In this document: piece after piece, positions 15,452-61,689 of the stretch
Numbering within the stretch: position 1 is the stretch's first letter
Layout: each line of letters starts with the position of its first letter
Assembly (NCBI RefSeq): GCF_002571385.2
Contig: NW_019218325.1
Location: forward strand, 16,642 to 80,641
Direction of reading: 5' to 3'
DNA: 64,000 bases
From: Stylophora pistillata
Taxonomy: Eukaryota
Program-made: the position numbers and the translations under genes
The notes under the pieces: generated by a model
The model's input: only the letters and a program-made list of their open reading frames with translations
The model's database searches: none
What the model was told of the DNA's origin: nothing

Positions 15452-18400
15452 CTACAGTCCATCCAGAAGTTGTCTTGCTTTTGGTCCAACTTTACTAGCA
15501 AAGAAATAAGCCGGTTTTTCAAGTCCAAGACCGTGGAGATATCGAGCATATTCAGTGTAGACTGCGTGCACCAGGGCAGCTGATTTCAGTGTGTTAAGGA
15601 CATATTCTAAACAGGATTTTGTTGTTTCATGTCACACGTCTTAAGCGCAGTCTACAGGAGACAGAACAGTTGTCACAAGCCTACGAATTTCCAAGCCTAT
15701 TCATTCTTGCATAAACAGTAGTGTTAATATCCATTACCGTGGCATAAATTATCATAATTTTCCGCAATTCACCTGGTCACGATGCTAGTTAATCGAAGGC
15801 AATCACCCATCCCCCGCCCCTCGCTCGTTGCAATTCCTTTTTGTAGCCTTCCTGTCGTACAACAACATCTTATTTTAAAAGGATACTGTTCTTTTCGTCC
15901 GATGGTGAAAGAAAGCCGTATTCTTGGCAGGCTTCGGCAAACAATGCTGCTCGGTCAAAGTAACGCATGCTGCAAATGAACAGAAATACAATTTTAATGA
16001 CTAACACTTCCAAACTCAGAAAACTTTGAGTTCTTGTTCTTACCTGTAGAGCATATCAAGCGCCCTGTAAAACTTTCCTAACGACAGCAACACCAAAACA
16101 GCTTTGCTCTGTAAGAGATTGGGTGTCACAGAAACTTTGATTAAAAACACATATTCAAATATGGAATAAAACATTTGAATATCTCCGTAACACGATTTAT
16201 CTACGCTTATCACGTGACACAGAGCTGAGGCTCTTAATAGGCCTTTTGCAGCTAGAGATCACGAGCTTAGATACCGCATAGCAACGCCAGACTGGAGAGC
16301 AAGCACTGCAGTGATCTCAGTATAGAGGTCACAGAGGTCTGCATTCAAACAAAGAATACAGCGGATAACAGGTCAAAAGGTATCCCAATTCGAGAAATCC
16401 AGTAAGAAGTAATCAACAGCTTCCCCGGGGTGTACCAGCAGCAAAATCACACCAAAATTCGTTTTTCGCTGATACACTCCAAGGAAGCTGTTGATTAAAA
16501 CTTACAAGATTTCTCGAATTGGGATACCCTTTAACTTGTTATCCGCTGTATTCTTTGTTTGAATGCAGACCTCTGTGACCTCTATACTGTCTGAGATCAC
16601 TGGAGTGCTTGCTCTCCAGTATGGCGTTGCTACGCGGTATCTAAGCACGTGATCTCTAACTGCAAAAGGCCTATTTGATTCTCCATGAAACATTTTTAAA
16701 CCATTAGCGAGCGGGAGGCAAATATAGTATTTCGTTGTGATATTGTGTTCCACCCTGACCTGTTGACTAGTGTGTGTACTGGAGAGATGCTCAATCCATC
16801 TCCTCACCACCTCTGCACAGTCTGGATAGTTCAGAGTAGCCTGCAATAATAATCAGTAAAATCCATTCAACCCTGGAGTCCCAGAACTGATTCACATCTC
16901 TCTTCTCCCAACAATATCCATGCATACATTACTCAGCAAACAGGCCAATCACATTACTCACACTTATCAAGAAGTAAATATGATTTGATACTACTCTGGT
17001 TTAAGGATTTAATATATGTAACCGGGGGAATTACAATTCATAGACCCTATGAATTGTAGTTCCCCGGCTACATTCATTAAATCCTTAAACCAGAGTAGCA
17101 TCAAACCGTGTCTGATTGTCCACCTGTTTGCTTTGGGAACTTCAATTTATCAAGTAGTAGTTGTTATCTTGATTTAACACCAAATTCTCATCACAAATTC
17201 ACAAAGAAACTTGTAGCAGCTGAAGAGAGGAATTAAGAACCAGATCTTGAAGGTTACAGGGTTAAAAAGGCTGCTCTAATCGAATATTTTCTTAAATTCC
17301 GAAGTTAATACGAACAAATCATATTCGTGATAGAGGTATTGATATCTAATTCTTACTAATTTTATAAAATTACAATACGGTACAATTTATTTTCGATATA
17401 AATAACAAAGATATCAAATACTCCAGATGATGTTGTATGGTGTCCGAAAACTTTGAAGAAATTGTTTTAATCTATACGTTTCAGCGGTGTTCTCGGTTAG
17501 AGAGCTTTTCGAATAAAAAAAGAGGTGAATATCACAATTTGCCAATAGGAGCTCAAATAACGAACGAGCAAACTTCCAACAGCACGGGAAACACTTGTGA
17601 CCGAGTCGCGGTTGGTTTAATATCGCATCTGATTGGTTAAGAGAATGGAACGTGTTCTTTGGATCAATCACAAAGCTTACGAAGGCAAGTTCGGGTTACT
17701 TCCGTTACACTCTGTTGAAACTTGCCGTATTTGTAGTTTTGCGCGGGAGGAGAAATGGAGGACACACTGAAACAGTATCGGAAATTAATGAATGGGCTGA
17801 GTTATCACCTTTGCAAGCCACGCGGCTCGATCCCATTCACCGTATGTCTGAAGATAACGGCAGGCATCCAGGCCCTTGTCAATCAAACAGAGCAGCTGAA
17901 CTCCCTCTGTACATAGTAACAAAAAGATTAGTGTGAACCCATACAATATCGCCAACTACATTGAACATGCCCGTTAATTGTTCTAATCATGCTCACCTGC
18001 AAGTTTACCGCTGGCGATGAGATTTGTGGCCACCAGTTTGATGGTGCTCTGTGAAGCGCCCGACGAACGAATCGTGGCCACAAGACAGGCTCTATGGAGG
18101 AAAAAAATTAAAGGGAAGAAAGTCGAAGGAAAGACGTCTTTACAAGGGAAGAGTCTAGTCCATCCTTAGACTCTGGAAGAGTCCTCAAAAAGGTCATCAT
18201 TTCAAAACCTTGTTTTATCTTCTACTTTTCGTTCAGGATGTCTTTCAATCAGGTGCCGTGAAACAAAAACCAAAGTTATCAAAACAGCCAATCAGGCCAA
18301 AAGTAAAAAAGAGACGAACTCAAACCAAATACACGTTAGAGTCCAGAAGCGAGGGAAAACGCGTCACTCAATGCCAGTGGTTGGTTTAAGCTTCAATTGG

Positions 18401-21400
18401 ATTGGCTGTGAAGTTCGCTCGGGTTCTTGTGAACCATCAGAGCGACGCATATCAAAACCAAAGCCAATTCAGAGTACTTTCGACAAATAAACACACAATT
18501 ACCAAACTCAGTTCTGGAGTCAAATTTTGCTCCAAGTAAATTTATTGAGCAAAAAATTGATGTTCAATAATACCTTAGAGAGTCCACATAATAGTTATCA
18601 TTGGCGGCATCTGTCTCTAGAAACAACTGCACTGCTCTATCTGCCTGTAACACAATCATGTCATACAACATAAGGCAACATAGTTAAGGCAATAAATGCA
18701 TCATTAAGCCCTTGTTGCTGACGAGATCGTCCAGCGCTGACCACCACAAAAACGTTCTAGGCATACCTATTACAAAGCCGTACTCTTGACGATAGACCCT
18801 AAAGAATATAGTTATTTTTTTTTTCACGTACAAAGTAGGAGAGCCGCGAAGAAGACCTGAGATTGCCATAGCTGTTCATCGAAATTGAAATTGTATCAAA
18901 AGATAGACCAGGCGCTACCTGTGATTTTCAACAACTTTAACTAAGTTTATTGAGTATCAAACAACAAGAAACATATGAAACATATGAAACATATTACTGC
19001 GAAGGATCGTTCTCATATACGTTTATTGAGTGTATAAAACAAATATAAACTCAAACTGTGTTCCTACTTGTCCCAAGAGCACCAGAGTGTCAGCACATTT
19101 TTTTGTGTGTTCGTAGGTGGATCGTTTGCTGTCATGAAGAGCAAGTCGGTCCAACTGACTCCTCTGAGAAAAGATCAAAATATGTACAAATTTGAAAAAC
19201 AAATTGAATTATTACAAACTCATGTGATGAAATTTTCATAGACTCAAAAACAGGCCATTCGCTTTGAACTGGTCGGTAAAAATCAAAGTTTAGTAATATT
19301 NCCCACCCCAGGGGAGGACATCCATCACACAGTAATCTCGTACGTGGGAAATTAACGTCTCCTACCCCTAACCCTGCAGGAGACGGGACCACCATTTATT
19401 CGTCCCTATCCGAGAAGACTAGAATATCTAAACCACTTCTTGATGTTATAAAAAGGCAGCATATTCTTCTCAATTATTTTAAGACCCTGAGTGTTGGTCC
19501 GGCCGGGGCTCGAACCCTCGACCTCCCACACATCAGTCCAGCGCTCTATCCATTGAGCTAACCGGGAGGCGGTCTTGTGGGTATGGGCCGATTGATTGCA
19601 GGAGCCATGATTAATTGCTGTTTTTCAGCAAGGGAGAGGAGTAGGGTTACAGCCCTATAGGGGGGGGGGGAGGTGTAAGGAAGCACACTACTAATTTACT
19701 TACTTAAGAGTCGACTCACCTGGAATGCATCAGTGTCACTGAGTATGTCGTAACAAGTGTCTAGGGAGACTGGGTAGCAGCAGCAGGTTTCGCTTCCATT
19801 CATACCAGTCTCTTCTTGACCACACATGTCTAGGTCATCGTCGATTGATAACAGGTCCAGGCTCCTGGCACTGAAGCTCCGTCTAAGCTTGGCTGTAGTC
19901 TCGGACGGGTTGAAGAGATCAGCAGAGAATGATCGTGCACGATTGTACATGGGTTGATGATCACCCTGCAAGGTAGAGAAAAATCGACAACTGTGAACTA
20001 ATGAGGACGTTTCAAGCACATCCAGCCATCTTGTGGAGGAAAACTCGGTTGACGCACTGAAATTCAGATTCGGGAGGTCTGGGTTAGAGCGATAGAGGTG
20101 GGGTGCGAGAGACTGGGAGAATACTAGCGATAAGCTACTTTCTCATCCAAGAGGAGTAGCAAAGCTGGAAGTCGCGTCATATCATGGATCAGTAGTTGTG
20201 TACCACTGAGCTGAGCTCGTTAAGACTAGCCCCATCGTTCCTCCATTCCCCAACCTAAGTGGTATTTTCAGCCGCAGATACTTAAATTCTTCCTTAACTC
20301 TTACACGCACCTGATGCTTTACGCACAACAACCTGGCCTTTTCTCGTCTGAGGAAGTGAAGAGCAACTTCCCAAAACGTTGTTTCGGATTCATCTCCATA
20401 TAAACTGAAACGAGAAATCATAAACAGAGATTTAAGTCAAGCAATACACGTGAAAACGAGATTTGAAACCTACTCGCGGCACTAAAGCTAATACTATAAA
20501 GAGATTAGCTTTCATTCGTAATTCACTCGTGTTCCCTGATTTAAAGACGGAGTAGTTCATGCTTTTTTAAAAGTAAATGTTTTGAACCCCAAGAATGTCG
20601 TGAAACAGAACATACCAACTTGATTAAAAGATTGAATCTGACCCAAAGCTTTATAACACACTGAACTTACAAAGCAGTAAGGTAGCACTTCTGTGCAGTC
20701 CCTAGTGTAGAATTCTGGAGCAGATTTGCAATGGCTCTGTAGAGAAAAAAAATCATTTCTATGAATGTACCGAGTAAACGTCTCTTACGTTTTGCAGCCT
20801 TCGATGGCAACAGTTGTGAACTTTAATCAGGAATCTCGTAAGACAGGTGTGAAGTGTAATTTCTTCCTAAAGACAACAACATTTCTTATACTCACGGCGG
20901 AATCATTTGTAACTGATCTTCAATAGCACGGAGAGTTTCTTCTTTCTGGATTTCCCTGGATCGATTAAAGTAAATTAAATTTCTTTAATTTTTTGTTTTG
21001 TTTTTGTTTGATTGTTTAGGAGTCTCATTACTGGAACATTAATTCTGTGAGATCTCTCCTGCCAAATTGTTTTTGGGGAAGTTTATAAATAAATAAATAA
21101 ATAAATAAATAAAAGCACACAGAGTAAATACAAAGGTAATGTAAGACTTCAGCTATGGAAATGAAAAACACGAAAAGCTCTACCTTCTACTCAAGAAAGG
21201 AGTAAAATTGGTCTTGCCAATAGGATTTTCATAAAAATATACTTAACGAAATTATTTTCTTGATTTGTGCTCCTTTACGTGTATATCTTAAATAAAAAGA
21301 ACAAACCTAAAGATGAACATCTAAGCACTTTCTTCTCCATAACCCTTTAAACTCTAAAGAGCGAGTAGCATCTACACTAACACTGTTCAATCATTCACTG

Positions 21401-24400
21401 AGATCACGAGTAGAGACGAAATGATTTCCAACCTGACAGGCTCGTTTGTCTAACAAATTCTCCTTGTTAGTACCAAAGGACAAGTATAAAGATGAGTATA
21501 AAGATACTGGATATTGAGGTTAGAGTCTAAAGAGTTTTAATGGAAAGTACAACTCTTTCAAAGTCAGATATGACTGTGTCCTGCAAGCATTACCTCTACA
21601 CATAGAGAAACTAATAAATCTGTGCCTTACAAGTCTGAAATATCTGTAAGTGAGTATTTGTCCCTTCCAAGTGAGTGCTGTAGAATGGACTTAAGAATGA
21701 GACTTGATTTTGGCTCCATGATGTGAGGACACCATAAAGGACCTTAATAACGAAATAGCAAAACAGATGACAATTTACACGGCTGATGCTAATAGAGGAC
21801 AGACAAAAGTCCAACTGAACCAGCAGTAATCAAATTAGAACACAATCTGTTGCAAATGAAGTGCTTTACACCTCTTTGAGGTTCAATAACGAGAGGGGTC
21901 AAATACAAGCACATACCATCAAGATCCATCTGAGCCATAGGTGAGGAAGAGTGTTTTAGATCCATGGTCATGACAAAGATTGCTCCATTAGAGTGGGTGG
22001 TTATTGGTAAGTCTGATGCCAACCAGTCTAGGTCAATAAGTGGGGGAGAATCCTTTGGCAGCTTGTAGTTACTGAATATCTCAAACTTATGAAGAAAAAA
22101 ACTGTACAGTTTAATTTTTTAATCCAACAAGATGCCACAAATCTTGAAATTAACCACAGAAGATAACAATTAAGCCTTTGGCCAACACATTGTTGACATT
22201 GACAGTGCAAGGTGATGGAAAGCTATAAAGATGTCATTCTGAGTAGCATATTTTATAATTGTAGCTCTATCATGTGGTTTCATATGTTTGCAATTTATTT
22301 AAATTACCTTTTGTAGGTCCCAAATATCAACTCCATCACTGAAGAGCACGCCCAGTTTGAAGTTACCCCGCCCAGGACCAAACTTTATTTTCTTGATGTG
22401 TCCTCTGTGTGTTGCAATAGATCTTGTAATGTAAAAAAAAAAGATCAAAATGACTGAAAAAGAAAAATGACTGACAAATGGAAAAACCACAAAAAAAAAA
22501 CATACTCATTATTCCAATAGCAACATAAGTTTTTCCTCTTTAACAAGATACAAAACTGATGTGTTTACCTGGTGACTCTAGCCTTTAATTCCCAGATACT
22601 CAAATTACCATCCACATCACTCAGCACCAAAAAGTCACCTTTCCAAGCTACATAGGTTACAATTCCAAGAGTACTCTGTGGAAGGGTGGAACAAAATCAA
22701 TTACCAGTGTTCAAACAAAAAAATTTATTTCAACTCAAACAGTCAGTTGAGTTGCATTGTAAAAGTCCTAAATACTAAAAGGGATGGGGAGGATTTACCA
22801 TACCTTCTGCCACCAGTTCCCCTAACATCCCCTCCCTAACAGTAACTCATTATTATTACACGACTCAGGCAGTCAGAGGGCTAATAACTAAAATCAACCA
22901 ATCAAAATGCTCTATTGCCGGTCAATATTCTCTCAGTATTGGACCGGGCACTGTCCCGAATGGTCCTGAATGGTCCTGAATGATACTGCACATGTGTCTC
23001 TTTGAACTTCAGTCATATAATAAATCTCTTATTAACCAAGCCTGCTCAGACCTGTACCGGAAGAATATTGGCTCTCGGTCTTTTTTGTACGGACCAAGCG
23101 CAGCGAGGTCCGTACTGTCAAGACCTCAGGCCAATATTCTCCCAGTACAGCCCTCGCACTTGGTTAATAAGATATATGTATCATCAAAACGAGACAAAAT
23201 AACTTTATTGTCCTCAGCAGTTTGTGCAAGAACAACTGACAGAACATTACTAACAGCATGAGTAGCTTACATCACACTGAACTTTGGAGCCATCTTTGAT
23301 CACTGTTCCTTCCACGACAAAATGATACAACACTCTGTCTTGATCCATACATACAAAGTGCTCTTTTATCCAAGACTGAAGGAAAAAAAAGAACTTGTTA
23401 AATATAATCATTAAAAGCTCTTTTGGTGAACCACAAGACAGAAGAGTTACTGATTGTCATAACTGCAATTTGCAACAGTATGTTATCTGTGATTTTACTT
23501 AGATTCGATGCAACAATTACTAAGTATGTCATCAAAACTTCCAATGTGAAAGAAAAACCCCAGAAGATTGGTGTCCACTTGAACTAATTACTAAAGATTA
23601 CAGGTCCTCATTATCGACGCAGCAGAACACGCATTTCTCAACCCGCAGGAATATTTAAGATGAGTTATGGAGTGAGGTTTGCCAGGGATGTCGACCCTTT
23701 AAAGATCTTTCCCCTGCTTGCATTGCTCTTCAGGGCCTCAGACTTTCCAAGGGGTGAAGAAACACTAGTGCTGATGAGATGAGAGGTGAAACACTAGTGC
23801 TGATGAGATGAGAGGTGAAACACTAGTGCTGATGAGATGAGAGGTGAAACACTAGTGCTGATGAGATGAGAGCAAGGGCCTGTCTCCAGACAAATTGCAA
23901 AGTGAAGATGATTTTTTTTAGTAGCTCTATGGGTGAGGGAAGTATTTTCACCTGCGTCTGTGTTTGGTTTGCCCTGCTTGGATCCAAAACATTAGCTGCA
24001 ATACCAGAAGGACTCTGCTCCAACTGCTGACTCAACTTTTTCTTCAAGTGCTTGGAGTGAAGAGATGGTGACCATTCCTGGAGAGTAAAGGACAATGAAG
24101 TTATGGTTCACCATTTGGCCCAGGGCCTTTAACACCCAGAAGCGATGAACATGTAACTTCTCCCAAAATTATCCAAACATAATCCATTATTTTTATAAAA
24201 ATAACGACACATTTGAAACTAAATTAATTTTATAAGACATGTTTCGGTCGTTCAATGACCATCTTCAGTTGAGAGTAGAACTGATCTGAAGTTACCGGTA
24301 CATTTGAATTTATAATATAGTACTAACCAAAAGCTATTGAAACTAACAGAATACCCAAAGGTAACAAAAGAGTGTATAATATGACGTGTTAATTAGAACG

Positions 24401-50200: not shown

Positions 50201-50340
50201 CAGTATTTTATCAGGGCAGTAACTTGTAGTGGATTTGGTTGATCAGGATAGATTTGTCTTAGAGTGGAGTAGATTGCTTCTAAGCCTCGAGGTGTTGGAA
50301 TACTTGGCGCCGGTAAAGACATTCCGCAATATCCTGACAT
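44231..50340 (-). CDS. SUFU: Suppressor of fused homolog; exons ~50201-50340, 49522-49656, 49118-49254, 48711-48883, 48402-48487, 46640-46712, 45591-45944, 45258-45396, 44419-44487, 44231-44302
   Basis: YPDQPNPLQVTALIKYWLGGPDPLD, HWHYISAGLSDLHGDGRVH, GFGFELTFRLK, WPAELLQSLARYVFQ, GDHVSWHLPLD, EGSNLSGVSA, LPLALRGRLNHGRHFTF, LPREYRWP. Confidence 0.97.
44577..44779. mobile_element. Palindromic MITE in a SUFU intron
   Basis: aatagtccattttacagttgtgtgcttggttgccaagcctttga versus tcaaaggcttggcacctaagtacacaactgtaaaatggcctatt. Confidence 0.85.
46870..47385 (-). mobile_element. LINE (CR1/L2-like) 3' end
   Basis: HNTRSSSAGNYY..YS.LNQHKNSFLRIGCKIWNSIP.NLRNLPK..FKKKI, followed by an AT-rich 3'UTR. Confidence 0.8.
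47386..48088. mobile_element. Probable Harbinger-like non-autonomous element, one end lost next to the LINE
   Basis: Right end reads ...ttcgacatttgaaccgggcc|taa, and repeated gtcgaa/ttcgac subterminal motifs occur at both ends. Confidence 0.45.
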
Positions 50341-50796
50341 GGCTTCTTGAAGATATTTTGATTACACAATTTCAAGCGCCTGAGGACAGAATAGTAGAAA
50401 TAATCCTACACTCGCCACCTCACAGGATAAAAACTATGTCCTCCGATCCTAAATTATCGATTTTCCAAAGCTAAACCTGAGCGTCAAGAGATAAAATGTC
50501 GCAAAGTCTAACACACATTGATGGAATGTGCGACGCGTCCGTTCTTGAAGCAGAATTCAGCGATCACGCCGAAAACACTTGGTTTCGCGGATAGCGTAGC
50601 CACGTGATTGAGCAAATCGGTAGTAATAGCGTTTTCCAGAATCAAGCTCTATCACAGCTCCAGAGTCTTCCGTGTTAAAAAGAGAAGTTTGCCCAACATG
50701 AACCTCAGATGTGTAATAAATTTCGAAGAAGACTGGACCGAGGTGAGGTTATCGAGCACAGACTCCTGGGACAGATATCTTTCGCCAACTTTCAAG
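50341..50796. promoter_or_regulatory. Bidirectional SUFU/BOD1 promoter (456 bp between ATGs)
   Basis: Head-to-head starts; CpG-rich; E-box cacgtg at ~50601; YY1-like aagatggcggc overlapping the BOD1 ATG. Confidence 0.65.
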
Positions 50797-53700
50797 ATGG
50801 CGGCAGAACGACCGGCGAAACTCGATTACAAATCGAGGCTTTTAGTCGACCAGATTGTACAACATGTAAAATCACAGGGCATTTTTGATCAGTTTAGACG
50901 TGACTGCATTGACGAATTGGAGCAGAAGGTTGGTTGAACGACCAGTATTTTATCAACTATCGTTGATTAGGAGGAGATGTAAGATGCGTAACTTATTGCA
51001 TGCAGCTTTAAGCTTATGTATACCATTATATTTTTTTTTCTACCCATACACATTGTTCTTCAAGGATGTTAACTTTATTTTACTTAGGAATCCTATCGTC
51101 AGTTGAAGCAAAGAGTCGAGAGCCATGTTGCAACATTCTTATCAAAGCAGACTTGGACGGACGCTCTGCCCAAAAATCAAGTCAGAGACAGTCTGCGAAA
51201 ACACATTAACCAGTAAGTAATACTGATATGAGAATTAATGAAATTAATTCGCAGAAAATTTAAACATCAACAAAATTATTGGAGGAATTTCATATGAGTG
51301 CCCTGGATAATATGAGGGTCCCCTATACCTCTTCTGCAAACAGTTTCACGCGTAAGTAAATGGCCTTTTCACGCATCACGAAAAATTAAAAAAACGGCTT
51401 CACGTTCACAGAAAAAAGCAAGCAATCACGTTTCACGTAAAAATGCCAAGGCTAAATAATGCTTCGCATAAAAATACAAATACGATTTACCTTTCGCAAA
51501 ACATACAAATACAATCATTACAAAAATGTATTTACACATTTTACCTTAAATTACTGAAATGTGCTACAGTAGATATTGTTGCACATGACCATCGTTTGGT
51601 AATTTTGTCTCTATTGTTGTCGATGTCTAGATCTTTTGTGGCTTGGGTAATTGAAAAAACTTTGTGGTAGAGCTTAGGAGGAGTATCCGGTACTGTAGTT
51701 TGGCTAGTTTAGTAAAAGCTGGATAGAGTGTGGATACTGACAGATAAGCTCACCTTTTCCGCAGAACCCTCCATTTTGATGCATCGAAATGGCGTGTGTG
51801 ACACATCGTGACAGACTCGATTCTAGGCCCTGCTGGTTCACTGCCGCTGTGGTTAGTCCTCAGTCCTCCATCTGCGAGCGCGTCGAATAGTTGAATAGGC
51901 ACGTTTTACATCCACTAGTTTGGTGCAGTTTACAAGCTTTAAGGTGGCTGAACACAGTTTTTGATACCTTTGTTTCTTTCACCATTTTCTCTAAAATCCT
52001 TGATCTTTCGGTCGCCAAAATTGGCAGCAAGCAAGTTAATAACACAAACTTTGTTTTTTCGATAGTTAAGCTGTCGTAGGTGTCATTGCCATGGCAACAT
52101 GAATGGATATAAATAGGCAATTGAAATCAGTTTTGTTTCTTTGTAGAAAATCTAGTTAGATACAATGAATATATAAAGTTGTATCTGATTTATCATCACG
52201 GATTTATTACGAATCAACTTAACAGCCTGCTCCCAGTTGGCTTGTTAGCTCAATTGGTAGAGCGCTGCACTAGTATTGCAGAGGTCAGTGGTTCGAATCC
52301 CGTACAGGCNNNNNNNNNNNNNNNNNNNNNNNNNNNNNNNNNNNNNNNNNNNNNNNNNNNNNNNNNNNNNNNNNNNNNNNNNNNNNNNNNNNNNNNNNNN
52401 NNNNNNNNNNNNNNNNNNNNNNNNNNNNNNNNNNNNNNNNNNNNNNNNNNNNNNNNNNNNNNNNNNNNNNNNNNNNNNNNNNNNNNNNNNNNNNNNNNNN
52501 NNNNNNNNNNNNNNNNNNNNNNNNNNNNNNNNNNNNNNNNNNNNNNNNNNNNNNNNNNNNNNNNNNNNNNNNNNNNNNNNNNNNNNNNNNNNNNNNNNNN
52601 NNNNNNNNNNNNNNNNNNNNNNNNNNNNNNNNNNNNNNNNNNNNNNNNNNNNNNNNNNNNNNNNNNNNNNNNNNNNNNNNNNNNNNNNNNNNNNNNNNNN
52701 NNNNNNNNNNNNNNNNNNNNNNNNNNNNNNNNNNNNNNNNNNNNNNNNNNNNNNNNNNNNNNNNNNNNNNNNNNNNNNNNNNNNNNNNNNNNNNNNNNNN
52801 NNNNNNNATTGGTTTTGCCTTGTGGTTGTTCCTAAAAGCTTGCCCTACCTTCTAAACCAATCAGATGTGTATATGTACCACAAGATTTTATTTGCTCCTC
52901 CTGAGGTTTACCTTTGTTCTAGTTGGCCATTGCCATTACTCGTTTGTATAGTTAACTGATCTCAGGCGAAAAGAGTTTCTGTAGCTTATCTTACTTTAAC
53001 CCTTAATGACCAAGATCTGATTGTTAATTCTCCCCTCTAGCTGCTACACATTTCCTTCTGTGCACCTACTTAATGTAGCCGTACAGAACGTGTGTTCTCC
53101 TTCTGTGCCCCTACATCATGGAATACTCTTCGTGATTCTCTTAAATCTGCAGCTTCTCTTTCATCTTTTAAAATTAATCTGCCCTTAAAACATTCCTATT
53201 TCTGAAATTTTATTTTTAGTATTGTGAAACACTACATAGGTTTTTGTCCCATTAAACTTTATTTTTGTCAGTGTAGGTACTACTGACTGTTAGTATCATT
53301 GTTATATTTTATTTTTATTATGCTATGTAAGTGCACTGAGATTCTTAAATGTGCTCATAAAAACCTTACTATTATTATTATTATTATTGAGAATTTGGTG
53401 AGCTAACAACTTCTACTTGAAAACTTTGAGTATTCTCATTACCTGTTTGCTGTATGTATGGATATTATAGGGAGAAATTATATGTTAATCATCTCTGGGA
53501 TTTAGGGTTATTGTACAGATTTGTTTTAAAGATAAGATAACTTGCTCTGATAAAATTGACCTCCAAACCAAGTTTATTCTGCCTGCATTTATGGCCCAAA
53601 CCTAAAGCAGTCAGACCATAGATCGGAAATAATGAGGTTCAGTAACTTTGGTATGGACTGAGAGAACTTCCTCAGTAAGATATTAAGGAGGGGGGGAGAA

Positions 53701-54956
53701 GTCAATTCAAACAAACTTTTAAATTAAGAAGGTAGGACAGTGAAATAATTTATGGCCTGCTTAATTGACCAATCATAGCAAGTGCACTAAATGAGAGATA
53801 TAATACATGTAATTTGTTGTAATAATTTTTTTTTAGATCGGAAGTGTTGGAGCGAGGTATAAAGCAACTGATCTCCCAAGCCCTTGATAGCAAAGCCAAA
53901 AGCTTCCAGACTCGCATTGAAGGTGTTGTTCAGAACTACATTTACACACAAAATAATCCACATAACCAAGACAAGCAAAATCGCAAACACAAGACAGTGG
54001 ATGAAAAAGAGGACAGCACATCCAACTCAAGCTCTGAGACAAAACATGTTGGGATATGTGACATAAGTGACCTTATTCCAATACCAGGCCTTATAAGCAC
54101 AGTTGCAAAGACAACAGAGACTGCTGATAAGAAATCAGGGGCTCAAGAGGGTTCAAAGAGTGGAACCTCAAAAAGTTTTCCAACAGGAAAGAAATCTCAT
54201 TCAACACAAGGGAAGTCAAATTTGCATGCGGGAAAAGGAGAGGAGAGTAAGACTGCAAGTCCCTTGGATGAAAAGGTCACTCAGGTAGATGAGAGTAGCA
54301 AATTTAAAGATGGAAAAAGCAAAGCATCACGAGTGAAAACAGAAAGTATGAGTACAGATGAGAGTTGTCTTTCACCTAAAGTGGAAGAAAGTTTATACAA
54401 AGTCAAGGATGAGATGAATAAAACCAGCAGATTGAAACTGGCTAGTTCCAGTCCAGGAGAATGTTTGGCATCTTAGTCGTCAGTGGAAGAAAGAGGTGAC
54501 AAATACATGACATCTGAGGGAAAGAACGTAAATACGAAACAAAGTTATCCTTTGTCTGGAGTTACAGAAACTGAGGCTGTCAAGGAGGATATCACGAGAG
54601 GAATAGTAGTGCAGGCAGACAAAGAAAATGAAGCAAACACACAGTTAAACTTCAAGGTCAAAGAAGAAAAGGTTGATGCATATGGAATTAATGAAGAAGG
54701 CTATATTTCTGGGAAACTGATAGAAGAACAAAGAGCCGACAATATCGTGTTGGATGAAGGAAGTAAAAGTGCTGAAAGTACCCAAAGTGAAAGTTTTCAA
54801 ACAGCGAAGGCAGATGACAAAGTTCCCGAATTTTGGAGCAGATTCAATGAAGCACCTGCCATGGATGTCACGGTCACCGCTGGTGAAATCAAAGAAGACG
54901 AAAGCGTGGAAAAATGCGAACCTATGATGCTATTTTCTGAAAAGATGTCCGCAGCA
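50797..54956 (+). CDS. BOD1: BOD1/BOD1L-family protein (COMPASS-Shg1 domain plus long low-complexity tail); exons 50797-50928, 51088-51212, 53837 onward; in-frame TAG at 54474-54476; 3' end lost in a gap
   Basis: LVDQIVQHVKSQGIFDQFRRDC, YRQLKQRVESHVATFLSKQTW...KNQVRDSLRKHINQSEVLERGI match the BOD1 domain, followed by K/E/S-rich sequence as in BOD1L1. Confidence 0.88.
52158..52309 (+). mobile_element. tRNA-Thr(AGT)-containing repeat running into an assembly gap
   Basis: Same leader and tRNA-like sequence as 3970-4220; the tRNA-like part (52239-52309) has a perfect anticodon stem CTGCA/TGCAG. Confidence 0.85.
52310..52807. other. Assembly gap (N-run); smaller gaps at 54957-54977, 1825 and 19301
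   Basis: n characters. Confidence 1.
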
Positions 54957-55106
54957 NNNNNNNNNNNNNNNNNNNNNAGTTGGGGGGGGGCAGCTTATAA
55001 TCTGATTATTTGGTTTTTGTTTGCCAGTAGGTGGGCCTATAACTGAGGGGGGGGGGCAGCTTAGAATCTTATGGGGTTTTTTGTGTTTGCCAGTAGGTGG
55101 GCCTAT

Positions 55107-55288
55107 GGACCACTTTCATAAATGGCTGCCGGATTAATATTCTTTTGTTTAAATTTAAATTAGCCCCACTAGCCTCGTTCTCCAGTACAAAATTCAAAAG
55201 AATACATCATCTCAAGCGAGGCCAGTAGGGCTAATTTAAATTTAAACAAAAGAATATTAATCTGGCAGCCATTTATGAAAGTGGTCTA
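55107..55288. mobile_element. Palindromic MITE
   Basis: gaccactttcataaatggctgcc.gattaatattcttttgtttaaatttaaattagccc is mirrored by gggctaatttaaatttaaacaaaagaatattaatc.ggcagccatttatgaaagtggtc. Confidence 0.9.
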
Positions 55289-55289
55289 T

Positions 55290-55580
55290 TAGCCTGCAGA
55301 GCAGGCATTCTTGTGAATTTTGGGCGAAAATTAGGACTTTAGGCTTTCTGTTTTATTTTCCAGACCATGTGTAAAATGGAGCGAGGCGAACAATTAGAAG
55401 GTGGGGGGAGGGGGAGAAGTTAGGGCTAGGGGGAAGGATTCCCTTCTCTCCTCTCCCCCTTTCCCCCGCCTCCTAATTTTTCGCCTTGCTCCGTTTTACG
55501 TGTGGTCTGGAAAATAAAACAGAAAACCCAAAGTCCTAATTTTCTCCCTAACTCCACAAGAACGCCTGCTCTGCAGGCTA
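55290..55580. mobile_element. MITE with long inverted arms, TA-flanked
   Basis: tagcctgcagagcaggc.ttcttgtg ... cacaagaacgcctgctctgcaggcta. Confidence 0.88.
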
Positions 55581-57168
55581 GTTGACTATCAAAAATTTAT
55601 TGTTTTCATATGGAGAGATGGTTTCACTCACTGAAAGGAAAATGGTCAACGTTTATCATTTTCATTGTGAGGTGTGAGTCGTTAGGAAGCCTGCACCTTC
55701 ATACGGGTATCTTTCGGGTGCTTTGTTCAGTAAACCTTTTCTCTTGGCGATTATTTCAAGCTCCGGTGTTTTTAATTAATGTTTCTTTTGTTCCGTCATT
55801 CCATACCTCAATTCAAGCCACTAACGCCAAATTGCTTAAATTTTTTAGTTTTAATCAAAAGTGAAGAAAATTGTTGATGAGCCTGTGGGTAGGGTGAAAA
55901 GTTTCTTCCCCCCCCCCTTTTTTTGTAACGAACCAAAGCAATTTGTAAAATAATGACAAAATTAAAGTCTGACCACATCTCTGGAAAAGTATGCCCATGA
56001 TGCTGAGTCCTTTTGACATTGCTTTTATTTATAACCTGCTCTTGCAATGCCTCCTTGAGAGGGCATGTTATAGGGGGTCCTTAGGCATCCCTTTCTGTTC
56101 CCTGTGTAACCTGGCTTACTCCTTTGCCCTAGCCCTAACTCCTTGACCAAAACGGTGATTTATGATTTCACCCCCCCTCCCCTCTTCCTTTTACAGGAAG
56201 TTTTAGGTCACAGTCCTTTTTCCGGTTATTAAATCTCATTCAGGATTGGCCAAAAAGGAATTTCTCCCACCTATATCTATGGTGCAAAAAGGCATCGAGA
56301 GGAAAGAAAAATACCAATCTTGATATTTTTATCTAACTCTAACTTCTTTGAGCTGAAATTATTAGACATGTTTGCAAAAGAGAGGGGATAATTTATAAGA
56401 AAATCTTGAGAGTGGAATGGGTCAAAGAGTTATGGCATTCAAGTGGTCAACTTTGAATGGTTATTCATTCTCAATGCACACATTTATGAGATTTATTGAA
56501 ACAATGTACACTGTACAACAACAAAAACAGGATAATATTGTTCCAATACCATATTACCATGAAAAATGATACAATCATAAAATTTAACACAAAGTATAAA
56601 ATTTAGATACGTGATGCATGCAGTCAGTTAACACTTTTTAGGTCAATTATTGATTCTGTGGCATTGTTGATATTCACTAAGAGCATTGACAAGACAGGAT
56701 TGAGCTTCAATTTGACGGAAAGCAGCACAGTCATAGAACCAATGAAGTATACAGGGGTATGAAGTATGTTGGCCTTCATAGGACCAGGGAGTTCATTAAG
56801 CATTGGAGGTCAGAATTTTCCCCCTACCACATAAAATTATCTGGCTACATTTTAATTGCATGAGTTAATTTGTACTCAGAAGTGGAAAGTATTCTCCTTT
56901 TACTTAGTGCTAATCTTCAACCACAACATTTCTAAATAAAAACTCTGAGCAGGGTACCATGTAAATCAAAACCCGTCTTCTACTCAATGCCTTAAAAATT
57001 GCAGTACTTAGTTCTTGCTGCACAAGATTCTTTCCTAGAGGCTAGAGCTAGAGGTAGTCACACTCTAAAGGACAGAGTACCCTCCCCTCCCCAAACTTTG
57101 AGGTTGGTTTTCATAATAAGTACTTTCATTTTAGACCAGAAAGTAGTTTTAACATGCATCTGCAGAAG

Positions 57169-60100
57169 CTACTGAACAGAGCAAAAGGAACTCTTGGTTT
57201 GGGATGATGCAGCTCTTGATGGCATTTCATGATTTCCATACTGTATGATATCAGCCTTTATAACTCTCTAAGAACAATGTCAAGGAAAATAGAGAATCAG
57301 AACTCCTTTTTCAGTCTCAAACTCAACTTCAAGAACACAGAGCTCACAAGAGTGACATTTTTGGCCACATAGCCATCAACTGGAAATGTGTGGGCATCAC
57401 TTTTCTGGAATGGAAGGGGGGATGGGATGTACTCCCCAGAACAATTTAATAAAAAGTAGGTAGCTACGATGTCTATTCCTTTATCCTGAGAGTTTGTGGA
57501 AAGAGCATTACAAGTCTGCAGTCTGCATGTGAGCAGGTGTAATAGTAATTAAAACCACTGACTGTTGTAACAATGGCTCTCCACGAGAACATCCACGGTT
57601 GAAGAGAATTTGAAGTGAATATGAAGGGGAGAAGGAGTACCGCATCTAAAAATAAACCTTAAACCCTAGAGAGAGGAACCTTAGAAGCCTTAAGAAACCT
57701 CAGAAACCTTAAATGACTGAGTAAAAGTAGTTTCAGAGTGCAAGCCTAAGATTGAATTTATTTGCACAAGTCTCATGCTCTATGGGTGAGACCTTGAGAG
57801 CTCTGAAATCATGCAACTTGAGACAAGCAAGAAAACATCACAATCTAACAACACTGTTCAAAAGTATTTCTTAGACTTGGTATAGTTGTATAACATAGTT
57901 TGCAGAGGATACAGATTGCTGCTCCATTTCATTCTTTGTAAGTCGTATTCCTAACACTTCTGCTGCTATTTTTTGAAAGCAGAGGCTGATCTGTTTGTAA
58001 CAAATAGCGAAACACACTCATGAAAGATGTCCTCATGTTGTAAGTTGTGAAAACAGTAGAATATCATTTACAAAAAGCATTACATTTAATCTTAATGTTT
58101 TGGAAAAAAAATGAAAAGAAAAAAATTACCTGGTCTGCTGTCTTGGCAGATACATAGTAACTAAAGACAAAAATAACAATATCTTTCTTTTACTATAAAT
58201 TCAAAGAACTCAATTCTCCTGTGCCAGAAGTTAAAATGCTCAATTGTACATCAGGCATTAAAATGAAGTCACAAACTACAAATTCAATAGTAACTGGGGA
58301 GAGAGGTAAATCTAGAAAATGGAGACTGAACATCACAAGACTCCAAAGTCTTACCTGGACAACCCATGCTCTTGAGCAAATTTTCCATGTTTGTCTGATC
58401 TGACAACTCTTAAATGCTCCAGGTCAACTAAAGGGATGGTAAAAAAAGTGTTGAAAGAAAATGTTACTGATATGTCACTTAATCTATTGACCCCTTAGAC
58501 AGACTAGCATCTAAATTCTCTCTACAATATCACCCCTGAATTGCACATTCAATGTCACCAGAATAAATTTGCCATCTTTCTTATTCTATTTACAAACATT
58601 AATTTATCTTCGCAACACTGATGAAAAAACACAGCCCTTTTGATCGGAAATAACTGTATGAAACCCTGACGTATCACTTACCTTTATTAGCTACAAGTGC
58701 TATATGAGGTAATCTAGAGCCATCTTTTTCACAAAGCTTCTTCACTGTATCATACCAGTCCTCAAGGTTATCAAAACTGTCCTGGTTTGTTACATCATAC
58801 ACCAGTAGTACAGCCTGCAGAGGAATGGCATATGTGGTCTCCATGGCAATTTAGGGAATATCAACAAAGTTGAAATGGTAAATTGGCCACCGTAACGATT
58901 ACAAAAGCTGACGTTTCGAGCGTTAGCCCTTCGTCGGAGCGAAGGGAGGAGCTCCGACGAAGGGCTAACGCTTGAAACGTCAGCCTTTGTAATCATTATG
59001 GTGGCCAATTTACCATTTCAACTTTTTTGATATATCCAAATTATTTTGTTACCCCCACCAACGCAGCCCCAAACAGTTTCTTTCGAAACTATCAGCCTTT
59101 ATTAATTTAGGGAATAGACTGCTCTTTGTATTAAATTATTAGTATAGTAATCCAAGTAGGATGTTGGGAGAACTCAAGAAAAGTTTGTAAATGAGCAGTC
59201 AGAGGCTAGTGACTTGCACATTTTTTTAGTGTTCTTCCTAGATCCTGAGTGGGTTATTACTCTGCTGAACCAATAGAAAATATGGTAAATTGATTTTATA
59301 AAATATTTATAAATGTTTCAACCTTTATGGGTTTACCTGTGCAATCAACAATGGGTTATTGACCAATCAGGGGGCTCATAGTATCTAAGTTATTTTGCAA
59401 CATGAAATTGATTCTCTTTACTGATTATATACCAACAATTTAGTCCTTATCATTATGATGATAATAATCATCATTAACCCATTAATGGCCGCAGCTTTTG
59501 TGGAAAACTGTGTTTTGAAGCTAGTTGAGCAGATTTCAGGTCACTGTTGTGGTTTTAAAAGCTCAAACTTACCAAACCCCTTGACAGCTCGTGCACTCGA
59601 CAGCCTTTCGATCCAAATGCAAAATGGCGGCCTGAAAATCTCGGGCACGTGCAGAGAGCAAAATTTCGACATAGTTTTTGGGTTGAAAAGTCATGCCCCA
59701 CTTACGACTTCTACTTTTCTCTCTTTCTCCTGCCCTTTTTTTCCCCTCTCCTTGCCTGAAGTTTCTCCTCACTTGCTGGAAATTGAGTAGGCTTCAATTT
59801 GGTGTAGAGATTTTTCAGAAACTACTCATTATTTTCAAAGCACATGCTCGGAAAGGTAGGTGGGTAGTGAAACACGATTTTCGTGCAGATTTTCAGGTCA
59901 AAGTGACACGGTTTTTTGGCTATTTCTCCTATCTCCTTCACTCAATTGCGCTCATTCTGGTATCATCTGTAAGATATTTTCAACCTGTTCAAGTAGGTGC
60001 TCAAATTCGTGCTCCAGGGTTAAAAGTGATGACGTCACAAGGCATAGAAAGGGTGTGGGTCCCCATGGGCGCATACGGGCGCACTGGACGTCAATGGGTT

Positions 60101-61689
60101 AATAGTGGTAGAATTATTTGGTTCTTTTATGGATTATATTACATAGATTTTGAGATTGGCATCTGTTAGAAGCTACATTTAAGCCTACCTTGATCACAGT
60201 TCTCTCACCCAAAAAATCTTAGTTACCAAATGAAAACATATAATGAAGAATAACAGTATCTAAAAAAAGACTGGCTTAAATTATTGTATCAACACATAAG
60301 CCGTCATGAGAGACGTCTGTTTTTTTCTTTTACTGATTATTGTCACATAATGCCATTTGGGAGAAATGAACTTTAAGCCCTGTGCAAATGCACTGGATTT
60401 GTCCACCGTACACGCTCTCAACATGCTGAGCTCAACAAGTTGAGTGCATTTGAACCCCCTGTTGAGCAGTGTTGATTCTTATTGAATCAAATTTGAAACT
60501 GGTCAAACTTTTCACTCCACACGGCTCAACATTTCCTTTGTTTCGCGGTCATCCATGCGTGGCTCAACAAAGTTGAGTCCATTTGTACAGCAACGCTCAA
60601 CATGTTGAGCCCACGCATGGGCAGTGACCAACGTATCCATTGGGAGTTTAAACATACCGAACATTTTACAAGATGGTGTCGCAGCAGTTAGAAGTTATAC
60701 AGGAAAGTTCAAATGCAAAAAATTCTAAAAGAGGAAATACAAGAAAATGGATGGAGGAAGAAACGGAAAAGCTGATTGATTGTTGGAAAAAAAATACATG
60801 GTTATGGGACGTAAGCACGAAAGAATACCATTTAAAAAACAAGAGAGAAAGCACTCAGTGATATGAGTGATGAACTAGACATTGAGGTAGCAGATATTAA
60901 GACAAAGATGTTTGGCCTTTGATCTCAGCTTGGCCGAACTTAACAAATAATTATCCCATGAGCCTTTGTGAAATCTTCGGAATGCTCAACATGTTGAGTC
61001 GTTGTTGAGATCATTTGAACACCCCGCTCAACAACACCTCAACAAACACTCAACATGTTGAGAGCTTATACAGTGGACAAATCCAGTGCATTTACACGGG
61101 GCCTTAGAGGATAATGACATCAAGAAAGGGTTACATTTCAAGACTGCTTGTTTGCCAAGCCTGTCCTATAATTTATACTTACATGAGCGCCATAAATATA
61201 TTTGTCTAACATTTTTCCACCGAGAGTTTGCCCACCAATATCCCATACTTGTAACGTGACGTGAACATTCCCTGAAAAAAGCATAATTATGCAATAAATC
61301 GTTAAAGTTATGTAATTGCGCCGAAGAAATAGCACCTGGTTCGACTGATTTCAAGTTTCGGAATTACGAACCTGGTAAGACAACTCTTCCCAGAAAGAAA
61401 TCCAGTCCTAGGGTCTGTTTGTAAGCTTTGTCAAAGTTCTCCTGGGAATATCTTACGCATATTGATGTCTACAAAGGAAAGAGTATAACAGTTAGCTTAT
61501 TTATGAGGAAGTTTTTCAGCGCACATGTAAATCATATTCTCGATGATGAGTCGAATTTGAGATCTTCGATCGGACTGAAAAGGGCTTCTTGAACTTATTT
61601 GATACACTCACCTTGCCCGATGCACCATCACCTAAAAGAACAAACTTCAGCTGATGGTCCGTTGTCGTTTCCTCATCAGAATCGGTCAT
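57169..61689 (-). CDS. RAB28: Ras-related protein Rab-28; exons ~61612-61689, 61373-61469, 61182-61270, 58682-58814, 58357-58428, 58130-58160, 57913-57990, 57169-57267
   Basis: [53 protein letters not shown] (characteristic of Rab28), [21 protein letters not shown] and a C-terminal CaaX, CSVQ. Confidence 0.97.
57268..57912 (-). other. U12-type GT-AG intron, last intron of RAB28
   Basis: 5' site GTATCCTCT; branch point TTCCTTGAC 11 nt before the exon. Confidence 0.85.
58861..59103. mobile_element. Penelope-derived palindromic non-autonomous element with hammerhead-like motifs and a 13-bp flanking direct repeat
   Basis: ~85-bp inverted arms containing c(c)gacgaagggctaacgct.gaaacgtcagc; aatttagggaata at 58848-58860 and 59104-59116. 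Confidence 0.82.
59474..60102. mobile_element. piggyBac-like non-autonomous element (TTAA target site)
   Basis: TTAA|cccattaa ... tcaatggg|TTAA. Confidence 0.65.
60376..61103 (+). mobile_element. PIF/Harbinger-like non-autonomous transposon with a decayed MADF/Myb-SANT ORF
   Basis: TIR agccctgtgcaaatgcactggatttgtccac / gtggacaaatccagtgcatttacacggggcc; TTA target duplication; ctcaaca/tgttgag subterminal repeats; peptide [30 protein letters not shown] followed by stops. Confidence 0.85.

What the first reader, a model, noticed from the sequence alone, without database searches (positions are those of the whole stretch)
15452..61689. Ancient microsynteny: neighbours of the vertebrate NK-homeobox paralogon are contiguous here, with no NK gene visible
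Seen: WDR11-FANK1-mitoferrin-SUFU-BOD1-RAB28 are adjacent within ~46 kb. Known (human map, from memory): RAB28 and BOD1L1 flank NKX3-2 on 4p15; BOD1 lies near NKX2-5 on 5q35; SLC25A37 is next to NKX3-1/NKX2-6 on 8p21; SLC25A28 is next to NKX2-3 on 10q24; SUFU, WDR11 and FANK1 are on 10q24-26. Inference: this block preserves a pre-bilaterian gene neighbourhood whose members were scattered over the chr 4/5/8/10 paralogon. No homeobox is recognisable between BOD1 and RAB28 (54957-57169), so the NK3/NK4 genes may have entered the block later or left it in this lineage.
Basis: partly seen in the sequence, partly recalled or inferred. Interest (0 to 1): 0.8.

Follow-up and report, generated by a model that had tools for sequence, protein, structure and literature searches.

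The report
Coral gene block from NK-homeobox linkage group
Six unrelated genes sit side by side in this coral in an order shared with other stony corals, and their human counterparts all lie near NK homeobox genes. That pattern fits the already known conservation of whole ancestral chromosomes; an older tight neighbourhood is possible but not shown.

Summary
WDR11, FANK1, mitoferrin, SUFU, BOD1 and RAB28 lie in that order at 15.4-61.7 kb, each identified exon by exon, and RAB28 is shown to be spliced by RNA. No homeobox exists in the block or anywhere on its 205-kb contig.

The same six genes, in the same order and orientation, occur on a contig of another coral-like assembly. Parts of the block recur in Porites lutea and in one more assembly. 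In Nematostella only FANK1-mitoferrin is kept, with a TRPC-like gene nearby, and SUFU is not adjacent. In Trichoplax nothing is kept.

The coral's NK3, NK4 and Msx sit together on a different 1-Mb scaffold in a stretch with few long open frames. In Nematostella the mitoferrin locus is on chromosome 5, the NK-cluster chromosome, about 5.65 Mb from NK3/NK4.

So the block is shared among stony corals and belongs to the NK-bearing ancestral linkage group. This explains why all human orthologues fall in the 4p/5q/8p/10q paralogon.

It is untested here whether mitoferrin, BOD1 and RAB28 were already tight neighbours before the cnidarian-bilaterian split. Interest is modest: a new example of a known phenomenon.

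The parts
15452..29638 (-). WDR11 orthologue, many exons. Start codon at 29638-29636, stop at 15452-15454.
   Evidence: PF23751 (WDR11 first beta-propeller) matches exons 26537-27475 and 28452-28793. Human WDR11 (8xfb_D) matches at E 2.5e-53. Exons are 81-88% identical on ENA contig ERZ25071792.
31217..36219 (+). FANK1-like gene (fn3 plus ankyrin repeats), head-to-head with WDR11. The first coding exon with the ATG was not located; it lies between about 29.7 and 31.2 kb.
   Evidence: Ank_2/Ank match on 34071-34283. The fn3 exon 31217-31456 has 1wfu as best PDB hit, E 1e-7. Nine exon pieces match the Porites gene that carries fn3 and Ank.
38415..42311 (+). Mitoferrin (SLC25A28/37 orthologue), single copy in the genome.
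   Evidence: Mito_carr at E 1e-37. Named relatives: mitoferrin-2-like of Porites at 82% identity and Nematostella mitoferrin-1 at 76%, with Trichoplax and vertebrate MFRN1/2 also listed. It is the only match in the own genome at E<=1e-10.
44367..50340 (-). SUFU orthologue, tail-to-tail with mitoferrin. Its start codon lies 456 bp from the BOD1 start codon.
   Evidence: PF05076 SUFU on exons 49482-49679 and 48966-49265. PF12470 SUFU_C on 45585-45980, E 6e-18.
50341..50796 (.). Short spacer between the divergent SUFU and BOD1 start codons; a candidate shared (bidirectional) promoter.
   Evidence: Coordinates read from the open frames. The same head-to-head layout occurs in two other coral assemblies: about 420 bp between the two genes' first-exon matches in L045 and about 470 bp in L060. 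Promoter activity was not tested.
50797..54476 (+). BOD1-like gene with three coding exons: 50797-50934, 51088-51213, and 53826 onward. It has an in-frame TAG at 54474-54476. Intron 2 holds the 498-N gap.
   Evidence: COMPASS-Shg1 profile positions 1-26 (E 1.5e-4) and 27-68 (E 2.6e-3) fall on consecutive exons. Exons are 79-98% identical in two other corals. The tail aligns up to about 54419.
56610..61689 (-). RAB28 orthologue. ATG at 61689, stop at 57169-57171, 3' end near 56610, tail-to-tail with BOD1.
   Evidence: Best PDB hit is Rab-28 (2hxs) at E 8e-12, against 2e-5 for other Rabs. RNA joints are at 57267|57913, 57990|58130, 58160|58355 and 58427|58682, all CT..AC on the + strand. The first-mate strand is consistent with a - strand RNA, and reads begin at 56610/56617.
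8098..10975 (+). The gene's 3' limit was not determined.
   Evidence: TRP_2 and ankyrin domains. It is 41-46% identical to a channel gene two genes downstream of mitoferrin in Nematostella.
62600..63487 (+). Flank: single-exon TMEM53-like (DUF829) gene, head-to-head with RAB28, about 0.9 kb between start codons.
   Evidence: PF05705 DUF829 at E 2e-41.

Best explanation
This is a real, transcribed run of six functionally unrelated genes in a stony coral.

1. All six belong to the ancestral linkage group that also carries the NK homeobox cluster. Cnidarians and vertebrates keep such groups at chromosome scale. The human orthologues of any set of neighbouring genes from this group are therefore expected to fall in the 4p/5q/8p/10q paralogon. 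No ancient tight neighbourhood is needed for that.

2. Within stony corals the exact order and orientation are conserved. The packing is tight. WDR11/FANK1, SUFU/BOD1 and RAB28/TMEM53 are head-to-head pairs whose start codons lie 0.5 to about 1.5 kb apart. Mitoferrin/SUFU and BOD1/RAB28 are convergent pairs. I infer, without having tested it, that few break points could separate the genes without damaging a shared promoter or a 3' end.

NK genes play no part. NK3, NK4 and Msx lie together elsewhere, in a stretch with few long open frames.
For: Gene identities. RAB28 splicing and its 3' end near 56.6 kb.

Between BOD1 and RAB28 there is only weak + strand signal and no spliced gene.

The whole block has the same order and orientation on ENA contig ERZ25071792:ctg18916, 1,296,259-1,341,765. 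Porites lutea has FANK1>mitoferrin><SUFU. ERZ25071797 has SUFU<->BOD1.

In Nematostella, FANK1>mitoferrin is kept and a TRPC-like gene lies two genes away, but SUFU is replaced by a metallophosphoesterase.

Nematostella mitoferrin is at scaffold_4:1,642,081-1,647,155. The Not2 gene, about 19 kb away on that scaffold, maps to chr5:6,187,790. NK3 and NK4 are at chr5:11.86 Mb. The NK4 and mitoferrin proteins are both recorded on an 18,096,078-bp record.

The coral's NK3 and NK4 are 4 kb apart and Msx is 32 kb further on, all on C52, a 1.04-Mb scaffold. No piece of the block's genes occurs in C52:480-600 kb.

Published work reports strong macrosynteny but poor microsynteny in sea anemones (PMC10719294). 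Other windows of this genome were flagged by first readers for the same kind of paralogon match.
Against: Three of the six genes (mitoferrin, BOD1/BOD1L1, RAB28) do more than share a paralogon in vertebrates. They lie within one to a few genes of NK3/NK4-family genes. That is closer than random order within a linkage group would usually give. My rough estimate is about 2e-4 for one given triple. About ten such triples would still be expected in a genome-wide look, so the estimate is indecisive. This is inference, not a computed test.

The role of shared promoters is inferred from spacing alone.
Confidence: 0.65

Rival explanations
1. Deep microsynteny. Mitoferrin, BOD1 and RAB28, perhaps with SUFU, were already tight neighbours in the cnidarian-bilaterian ancestor. 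Either the NK3-NK4 pair later moved in between them on the lineage to vertebrates, or it sat there originally and moved out in anthozoans.
For: In gnathostomes Nkx3.2 lies directly between Bod1l1 and Rab28, and in lamprey Nkx3.2 lies next to Nkx2.6 and Rab28 (PMC9665848). SLC25A28 shares the 10q24.2 locus with NKX2-3. SLC25A37 shares a 1-Mb chicken window with NKX3-1 and NKX2-6. BOD1 comes after NKX2-5 and STC2 in the cattle chromosome 20 gene list. In corals these three genes lie within four consecutive genes. All of them share one chromosome with NK3/NK4 in Nematostella, where that could be checked.
Against: In Nematostella the block is already broken next to mitoferrin. There is no SUFU, BOD1 or RAB28 within 10 kb on either side of the gene. 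Trichoplax mitoferrin has unrelated neighbours.

Bod1l1 and Rab28 share a strand in vertebrates but are convergent in corals, so at least one extra inversion is needed.

In both anthozoans NK3/NK4 sit among other NK genes, as expected for tandem duplicates, 5.65 Mb away or on another scaffold. A coincidence of this size is expected a few times per genome when many windows are read.
Confidence: 0.3
2. Genomic regulatory block. The genes are held together because they carry enhancers of a developmental gene in or beside the block. Candidates would be an NK gene hidden in a gap, or SUFU itself.
For: Bystander genes kept next to developmental regulators are a known cause of ancient microsynteny (PMC3514665, PMC7530604). 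In Nematostella the homeobox gene Not2 lies about 19 kb from mitoferrin.
Against: There is no homeobox in the block, on the 205-kb contig, or in the syntenic 45 kb of the other coral assembly. The genes are compact, with very short spacers and no gene desert. Sea anemones are reported to have short-range regulation and no TADs. No conserved non-coding elements were looked for.
Confidence: 0.04
3. Assembly artefact. The adjacency comes from a misjoin at one of the N gaps.
For: Two gaps lie inside the block and a 3.8-kb N stretch precedes the window.
Against: An independent assembly carries all six genes in the same order and orientation with no N in the last stretch checked. Porites and a further assembly agree for parts of the block. 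Both gaps lie inside or just after BOD1, and BOD1's exons on either side belong to one gene.
Confidence: 0.01

Closest known systems
Cnidarian-bilaterian ancestral linkage groups (macrosynteny), as described for Nematostella and other animals (PMC10719294, PMC8809688)
   Same: Neighbouring cnidarian genes have human orthologues confined to one set of paralogous chromosome segments. The Nematostella counterpart of the locus lies on the chromosome that carries the NK cluster.
   Different: Macrosynteny says nothing about gene order. Here the exact order and orientation of six genes is also kept among stony corals.
Conserved ancestral microsyntenic pairs, many of them head-to-head pairs thought to share promoters (Irimia et al. 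2012, PMC3514665)
   Same: There are three divergent pairs with start codons 0.5-1.5 kb apart. Two of them (WDR11/FANK1 and SUFU/BOD1) were also found, with the same orientation, in other corals.
   Different: Conservation is shown here only within hexacorals, and for SUFU/BOD1 only within coral-like assemblies. In human the partners are far apart or on different chromosomes. The supplementary pair lists of that paper were not available to check.
Vertebrate NK paralogon on chromosomes 4, 5, 8 and 10, with the Bod1l1-Nkx3.2-Rab28 locus (PMC2446394, PMC9665848)
   Same: It contains the same gene families: RAB28, BOD1/BOD1L1, mitoferrins, SUFU, WDR11 and FANK1 (the last three placed on 10q24-26 from memory of the human map).
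   Different: The coral block has no NK gene. Coral NK3-NK4-Msx lie on another scaffold. BOD1 and RAB28 are convergent here but share a strand in vertebrates.

Membership tests
Conserved microsyntenic block (orthologues adjacent in distant lineages) | Same genes adjacent in a second, independently assembled species | tested here: met
   All six are on ERZ25071792:ctg18916. Three are in Porites lutea. Two are in ERZ25071797.
Conserved microsyntenic block (orthologues adjacent in distant lineages) | Adjacency kept between cnidarian orders (coral against sea anemone) | tested here: inconclusive
   In Nematostella FANK1>mitoferrin is kept and a TRPC-like gene is nearby, but SUFU is not adjacent. 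The positions of WDR11, SUFU, BOD1 and RAB28 in Nematostella could not be obtained.
Conserved microsyntenic block (orthologues adjacent in distant lineages) | Adjacency kept between cnidarians and bilaterians or placozoans (needed for 'pre-bilaterian') | tested here: not met
   Trichoplax mitoferrin is flanked by a WD40 gene and a HECT gene. Ptychodera, Saccoglossus and Hydra show no neighbour within 10 kb, so they are uninformative. In human the six genes are spread over three chromosomes. Only RAB28 and BOD1L1 are near each other, with NKX3-2 between them.
NK-cluster-bearing ancestral linkage group | [quoted passage not shown] | tested here: met
   Mitoferrin and FANK1 are at about 6.20 Mb on Nematostella chr5, and NK3/NK4 are at 11.86 Mb. 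This was tested for only two of the six genes.
NK-cluster-bearing ancestral linkage group | Human orthologues confined to the 4p/5q/8p/10q paralogon | tested here: inconclusive
   Papers confirm RAB28 and BOD1L1 on chromosome 4, SLC25A28 at 10q24.2, SLC25A37 linked to NKX3-1, and BOD1 linked to NKX2-5. The positions of SUFU, WDR11 and FANK1 on 10q24-26 rest on my memory of the human map.
Genomic regulatory block around a developmental regulator | A developmental transcription-factor gene inside or beside the block | tested here: not met
   No homeobox on C540 or in the syntenic loci of other corals.
Genomic regulatory block around a developmental regulator | Conserved non-coding elements in bystander introns or spacers | not tested
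   No non-coding alignment between species was made.
RAB28 subfamily of Rab GTPases | Closest to Rab28 rather than to other Rabs | tested here: met
   Exon 58677-58850 matches Rab-28 (2hxs) at E 8e-12; the next best hits, SEC4 and Rab8A, are at 2e-5 or worse.
BOD1 / COMPASS-Shg1 family | Shg1 domain over Pfam's threshold | tested here: inconclusive
   Two exons score 22.9 and 18.9 bits, each below the 24-bit cut-off, but they match consecutive profile positions 1-26 and 27-68. The joined protein was not searched.

The most novel reading that the evidence does not exclude
Mitoferrin, BOD1 and RAB28, possibly with SUFU, formed a tight neighbourhood already in the cnidarian-bilaterian ancestor. 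On this reading the NK3-NK4 homeobox pair was inserted into it, or excised from it, by an intrachromosomal rearrangement. The vertebrate 'bystander' genes flanking NKX3-2, NKX3-1 and NKX2-3 would then be older neighbours of each other than of the NK genes.
Probability: 0.3. Interest if true: 0.55.

Novelty: new member of a known kind. Interest (0 to 1): 0.3.

Why it matters
If only the safe reading holds, this is one more illustration of two known facts. Cnidarian and vertebrate chromosomes share gene content, and compact head-to-head gene pairs resist rearrangement. It is useful mainly as a marker block for coral genome comparisons.

If the deeper reading holds, it would give a datable case of a developmental gene pair (NK3-NK4) moving into or out of a pre-existing gene neighbourhood. 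That bears on how the regulatory landscapes around vertebrate NK genes were assembled, and on whether bystander genes are kept because of the developmental gene or independently of it.

Tried and rejected
**Walking along chromosomes of annotated genomes.** So the positions of WDR11, SUFU, BOD1 and RAB28 in Nematostella, and the rest of the block in Porites, stayed out of reach.

**Neighbours of mitoferrin in Ptychodera, Hydra and Saccoglossus.** No other gene lies within 10 kb, so these are uninformative.

**BOD1 word search.** It returned only two short unnamed proteins. A Pfam Shg1 scan of the own genome found nothing because the domain is split by introns.

**Literature.** No paper in the library holds microsynteny together with at least two of SUFU, BOD1 and RAB28. 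The supplementary tables of the microsynteny and linkage-group papers were not held.

**Hidden NK gene.** Rejected for the sequenced bases. RNA shows no spliced gene between BOD1 and RAB28.

**Paralogues beside the coral NK3/NK4.** None of the block's genes occurs in C52:480-600 kb; only transposon fragments match.

**Not run.** No structure or complex prediction, because no binding or fold claim is made.

**Joined models.** All searches were exon by exon, by reference.

The N gaps were neither filled nor looked up, and the reads were laid on 54978-60900, beside the gaps.
Full report
**Where the window lies.** The window is G000:C540:16642-80641, on a 205,432-bp contig of a 397.6-Mb assembly in 5,513 contigs. 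The closest named relatives of its proteins are from stony corals and sea anemones. RNA runs labelled 'coral metagenome' hold the sequence.

**Check of the observation.** I listed stop-to-stop open frames on both strands and searched single exons by reference.

- WDR11, - strand, 15452-29638. The WDR11-specific Pfam family PF23751 matches two exons. A 313-residue exon frame matches human WDR11 at E 2.5e-53.
- FANK1-like, + strand, about 31.2-36.2 kb. It has ankyrin exons. Its fibronectin-3 exon has PDB entry 1wfu as best match; from memory, that entry is the fn3 domain of mouse FANK1. The gene at the same position in Porites carries fn3 plus Ank.
- Mitoferrin, + strand, 38415-42311. Mito_carr matches at E 1e-37. 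Named relatives are mitoferrins of Porites (82% identity), Nematostella (76%), Trichoplax, hemichordates and vertebrates. It is single copy in the genome.
- SUFU, - strand, 44367-50340. Both SUFU-specific Pfam families match.
- BOD1-like, + strand, 50797-54476. Two consecutive exons match positions 1-26 and 27-68 of the COMPASS-Shg1 profile. Each match is just under the family threshold.
- RAB28, - strand, 57169-61689. The best solved relative is Rab-28 by a wide margin.

**RNA evidence.** PolyA and stranded RNA runs were laid on 54978-60900. They show four RAB28 introns with GT..AG ends on the - strand, including a 31-base exon at 58130-58160, and a 3' end near 56610. Between BOD1 and RAB28 there is only weak + strand signal at 55.56-56.64 kb, probably a BOD1 3' UTR or read-through, and no spliced gene.

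**Flanking genes.** Upstream is a TRPC-like channel gene, whose two longest open frames span 8098-10975 on the + strand. Downstream is a single-exon TMEM53/DUF829 gene at 62600-63487 on the + strand.

**The gaps.** The 498-N gap lies in BOD1 intron 2. The exons on both sides match consecutive profile positions. In two other corals the same intron is 0.3-0.6 kb and holds no exon. The 21-N gap lies 480 bp behind the BOD1 TAG, in a frame that stays open. Continuity across it cannot be judged, and I did not fill either gap.

**No NK gene.**
- A Pfam homeodomain scan of the whole assembly gave 149 matches, none on C540. Only 150 of 223 candidates were scored.
- I fetched the rest of C540. No homeodomain helix-3 motif occurs in any frame.
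- tblastn with seven of the coral's own NK-type homeodomains gave nothing better than E 0.39.
- About 19 kb of the contig is N.

**Where the coral's NK genes are.** By homeodomain sequence, NK3 (C52:537.7-538.6 kb) and NK4 (C52:541.5-543.0 kb) lie 4 kb apart. Msx is 32 kb further on, and another NK-like gene lies at 489 kb, all on the 1.04-Mb scaffold C52. NK1, NK5 and Hex are on C219; these names rest on my reading of the homeodomains. The NK4 frame's best named relatives are Nkx-2.5-like proteins and Nematostella 'NK-4 homeobox protein'. The 120 kb around NK3/NK4 has few long open frames and no piece of the six genes.

**Other species.**
- Porites lutea (chromosome OY283127.1): FANK1>mitoferrin><SUFU in the same orientation.
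- ENA contig ERZ25071797:ctg29073: SUFU and BOD1 head-to-head.
- ENA contig ERZ25071792:ctg18916: I walked the contig with exact open-frame look-ups. It carries WDR11<->FANK1>mitoferrin><SUFU<->BOD1><RAB28 over about 45 kb, in the same order and orientation and without any homeodomain motif. Its mitoferrin is 78% identical, about as distant as Porites. Its species is unknown to me.
- Nematostella: a FANK1-like gene precedes mitoferrin as in the coral. The next genes are a metallophosphoesterase and a TRPC-like channel that is 41-46% identical to the one flanking the coral block. SUFU is not there.
- Trichoplax: mitoferrin lies between a WD40 gene and a HECT gene.
- Ptychodera, Hydra and Saccoglossus: no neighbour within 10 kb.

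**Linkage to the NK cluster in Nematostella.** The mitoferrin and NK-4 proteins are both recorded on an 18,096,078-bp record, and mitoferrin's record is OW051990.1. In the older assembly mitoferrin is at scaffold_4 (DS469510.1):1,642,081-1,647,155.

The supplement of Zimmermann et al. 2023 (PMC10719294) maps the homeobox gene Not2, at scaffold_4:1,621,203, to chr5:6,187,790. It places Nk3 at chr5:11,857,406 and Nk4 at chr5:11,860,946, with Nk6, Nk7, Msx, Nk5 and Nk1 within about 1 Mb.

So the Nematostella counterpart of the block lies on the NK chromosome. It is about 5.65 Mb from NK3/NK4 and about 19 kb from Not2.

**The vertebrate side.**
- Bod1l1-Nkx3.2-Rab28 is a conserved gnathostome arrangement. 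In lamprey Nkx3.2 lies next to Nkx2.6 and upstream of Rab28 (PMC9665848).
- NKX2-3, SLC25A28, GOT1 and ENTPD7 share the 10q24.2 locus (PMC3297573).
- NKX2-6, NKX3-1, STC1, ENTPD4 and SLC25A37 share one 1-Mb chicken window (PMC6678660).
- BNIP1, NKX2-5, STC2, BOD1 and CPEB4 are listed together on cattle chromosome 20; STC2, BOD1 and CPEB4 are at 4.97, 5.31 and 5.60 Mb (PMC12128320).
- The NK paralogon on human chromosomes 4, 5, 8 and 10 is long established (PMC2446394).
- SUFU, WDR11 and FANK1 on 10q24-26 rest on my memory of the human map.

**Interpretation.** Sea anemone genomes show strong chromosome-scale conservation with bilaterians but poor conservation of local order (PMC10719294). Given that, six neighbouring coral genes whose human orthologues all fall in one paralogon is the expected outcome for any stretch of that linkage group.

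First readers flagged several other windows of this same genome for the same kind of match. Those notes are unchecked, but they fit a general rather than a special cause.

What goes beyond macrosynteny is the conservation of exact order and orientation among stony corals. The layout suggests why:
- Three divergent pairs have start codons 0.46 to about 1.5 kb apart: SUFU/BOD1 at 456 bp, RAB28/TMEM53 at about 0.9 kb, and WDR11/FANK1 at under about 1.5 kb.
- There are two convergent pairs. In one of them, BOD1/RAB28, the transcript ends nearly touch at about 56.6 kb.

Divergent pairs with short spacers are the commonest class of anciently conserved gene pairs (PMC3514665). That shared promoters act here is inference.

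**The stronger claim.** This is neither shown nor excluded.

In its favour, mitoferrin, BOD1 and RAB28 lie within four genes in corals. Combining the four vertebrate paralogons, they lie within roughly seven genes around NK3-NK4 in the inferred pre-duplication order ENTPD-mitoferrin/RAB28-NK3-NK4-STC-BOD1. That order is my own reconstruction and from memory.

For a linkage group of about 800 genes in random order, one given triple would do this with probability near 2e-4. A genome-wide look at all coral-adjacent triples would still produce about ten such cases by chance. This is a rough figure, not a computed test.

Against it:
- Nematostella has already lost the mitoferrin-SUFU junction.
- Trichoplax shows nothing.
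- BOD1 and RAB28 differ in relative orientation between corals and vertebrates.
- In both anthozoans NK3/NK4 sit among other NK genes, far from the block.

I put the deep-microsynteny reading at about 0.3.

**Verdict.** The feature is a coral-conserved six-gene block belonging to the NK-bearing ancestral linkage group. It is a new example of a known kind of conservation, of modest interest, with a clearly testable stronger reading.

Noticed in passing
window 8098-10975 (+); L017:21131-24216: A TRPC-like channel gene (TRP_2 plus ankyrin) flanks the block. Its Nematostella relative, 41-46% identical, lies two genes downstream of mitoferrin. The wider neighbourhood is therefore partly shared but rearranged between coral and sea anemone.
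   Followed up: partly
window 58130-58160 (-): RAB28 has a 31-base internal exon, defined only by RNA joints (57990|58130 and 58160|58355). It is too short to show up as an open frame.
   Followed up: partly
window 54474-55046 (+): The BOD1 last exon has an in-frame TAG at 54474-54476, yet the same frame stays open for about 160 more codons of similar K/E/S-rich composition, up to the 21-N gap. The other coral's last exon is a 650-codon open frame. This could be a real stop, an allele or a sequence error.
   Followed up: partly
window 58740-59135, 54978-55373, 59334-60125: RNA depth is very high on both strands, with many loose ends and irregular joints. These look like high-copy repeats in a RAB28 intron and behind BOD1, not genes of this locus.
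   Followed up: no
window 49755-49925 (SUFU intron): An element of about 150-170 bp has dozens of copies, 85-89% identical, on many contigs. It also matches itself in reverse orientation at 70-77%, like a small inverted-repeat transposon.
   Followed up: no
G000:C52:488884-574708: Coral NK3 and NK4 lie 4 kb apart on the same strand. Msx is 32 kb further on and another NK-like homeobox lies at 489 kb, in a stretch with few other long open frames. The NK3-NK4-Msx order and spacing resemble Nematostella chr5 (3.9 kb and 65 kb).
   Followed up: partly
Nematostella scaffold_4:1,621,203-1,622,926 (chr5:6,187,790): The homeobox gene Not2 lies about 19 kb from Nematostella mitoferrin. No counterpart is present on the coral contig C540.
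   Followed up: partly
G000:C540:102748-103095, 169926-170402, 174421-174885 (L004, L007, L013): Several fibrinogen-C-domain-like open frames, interleaved with cysteine-rich frames, look like a tandem family. A 397-codon single-exon frame at C540:95921-97111 looks receptor-like, and a C2-domain frame at C540:9941-10348 looks cPLA2-like. All were judged by eye only.
   Followed up: no
G000:C540:12796-16641: A 3,846-N stretch lies directly before the window start, so the 5' neighbourhood of the TRPC-like gene is partly unread.
   Followed up: no
window 51-2700: Near-identical open frames recur at 51-239, 1122-1310 and 1989-2126, with partners at 178-348, 1249-1446 and 2116-2325. This is a tandemly repeated unit of about 1 kb at the window start.
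   Followed up: no
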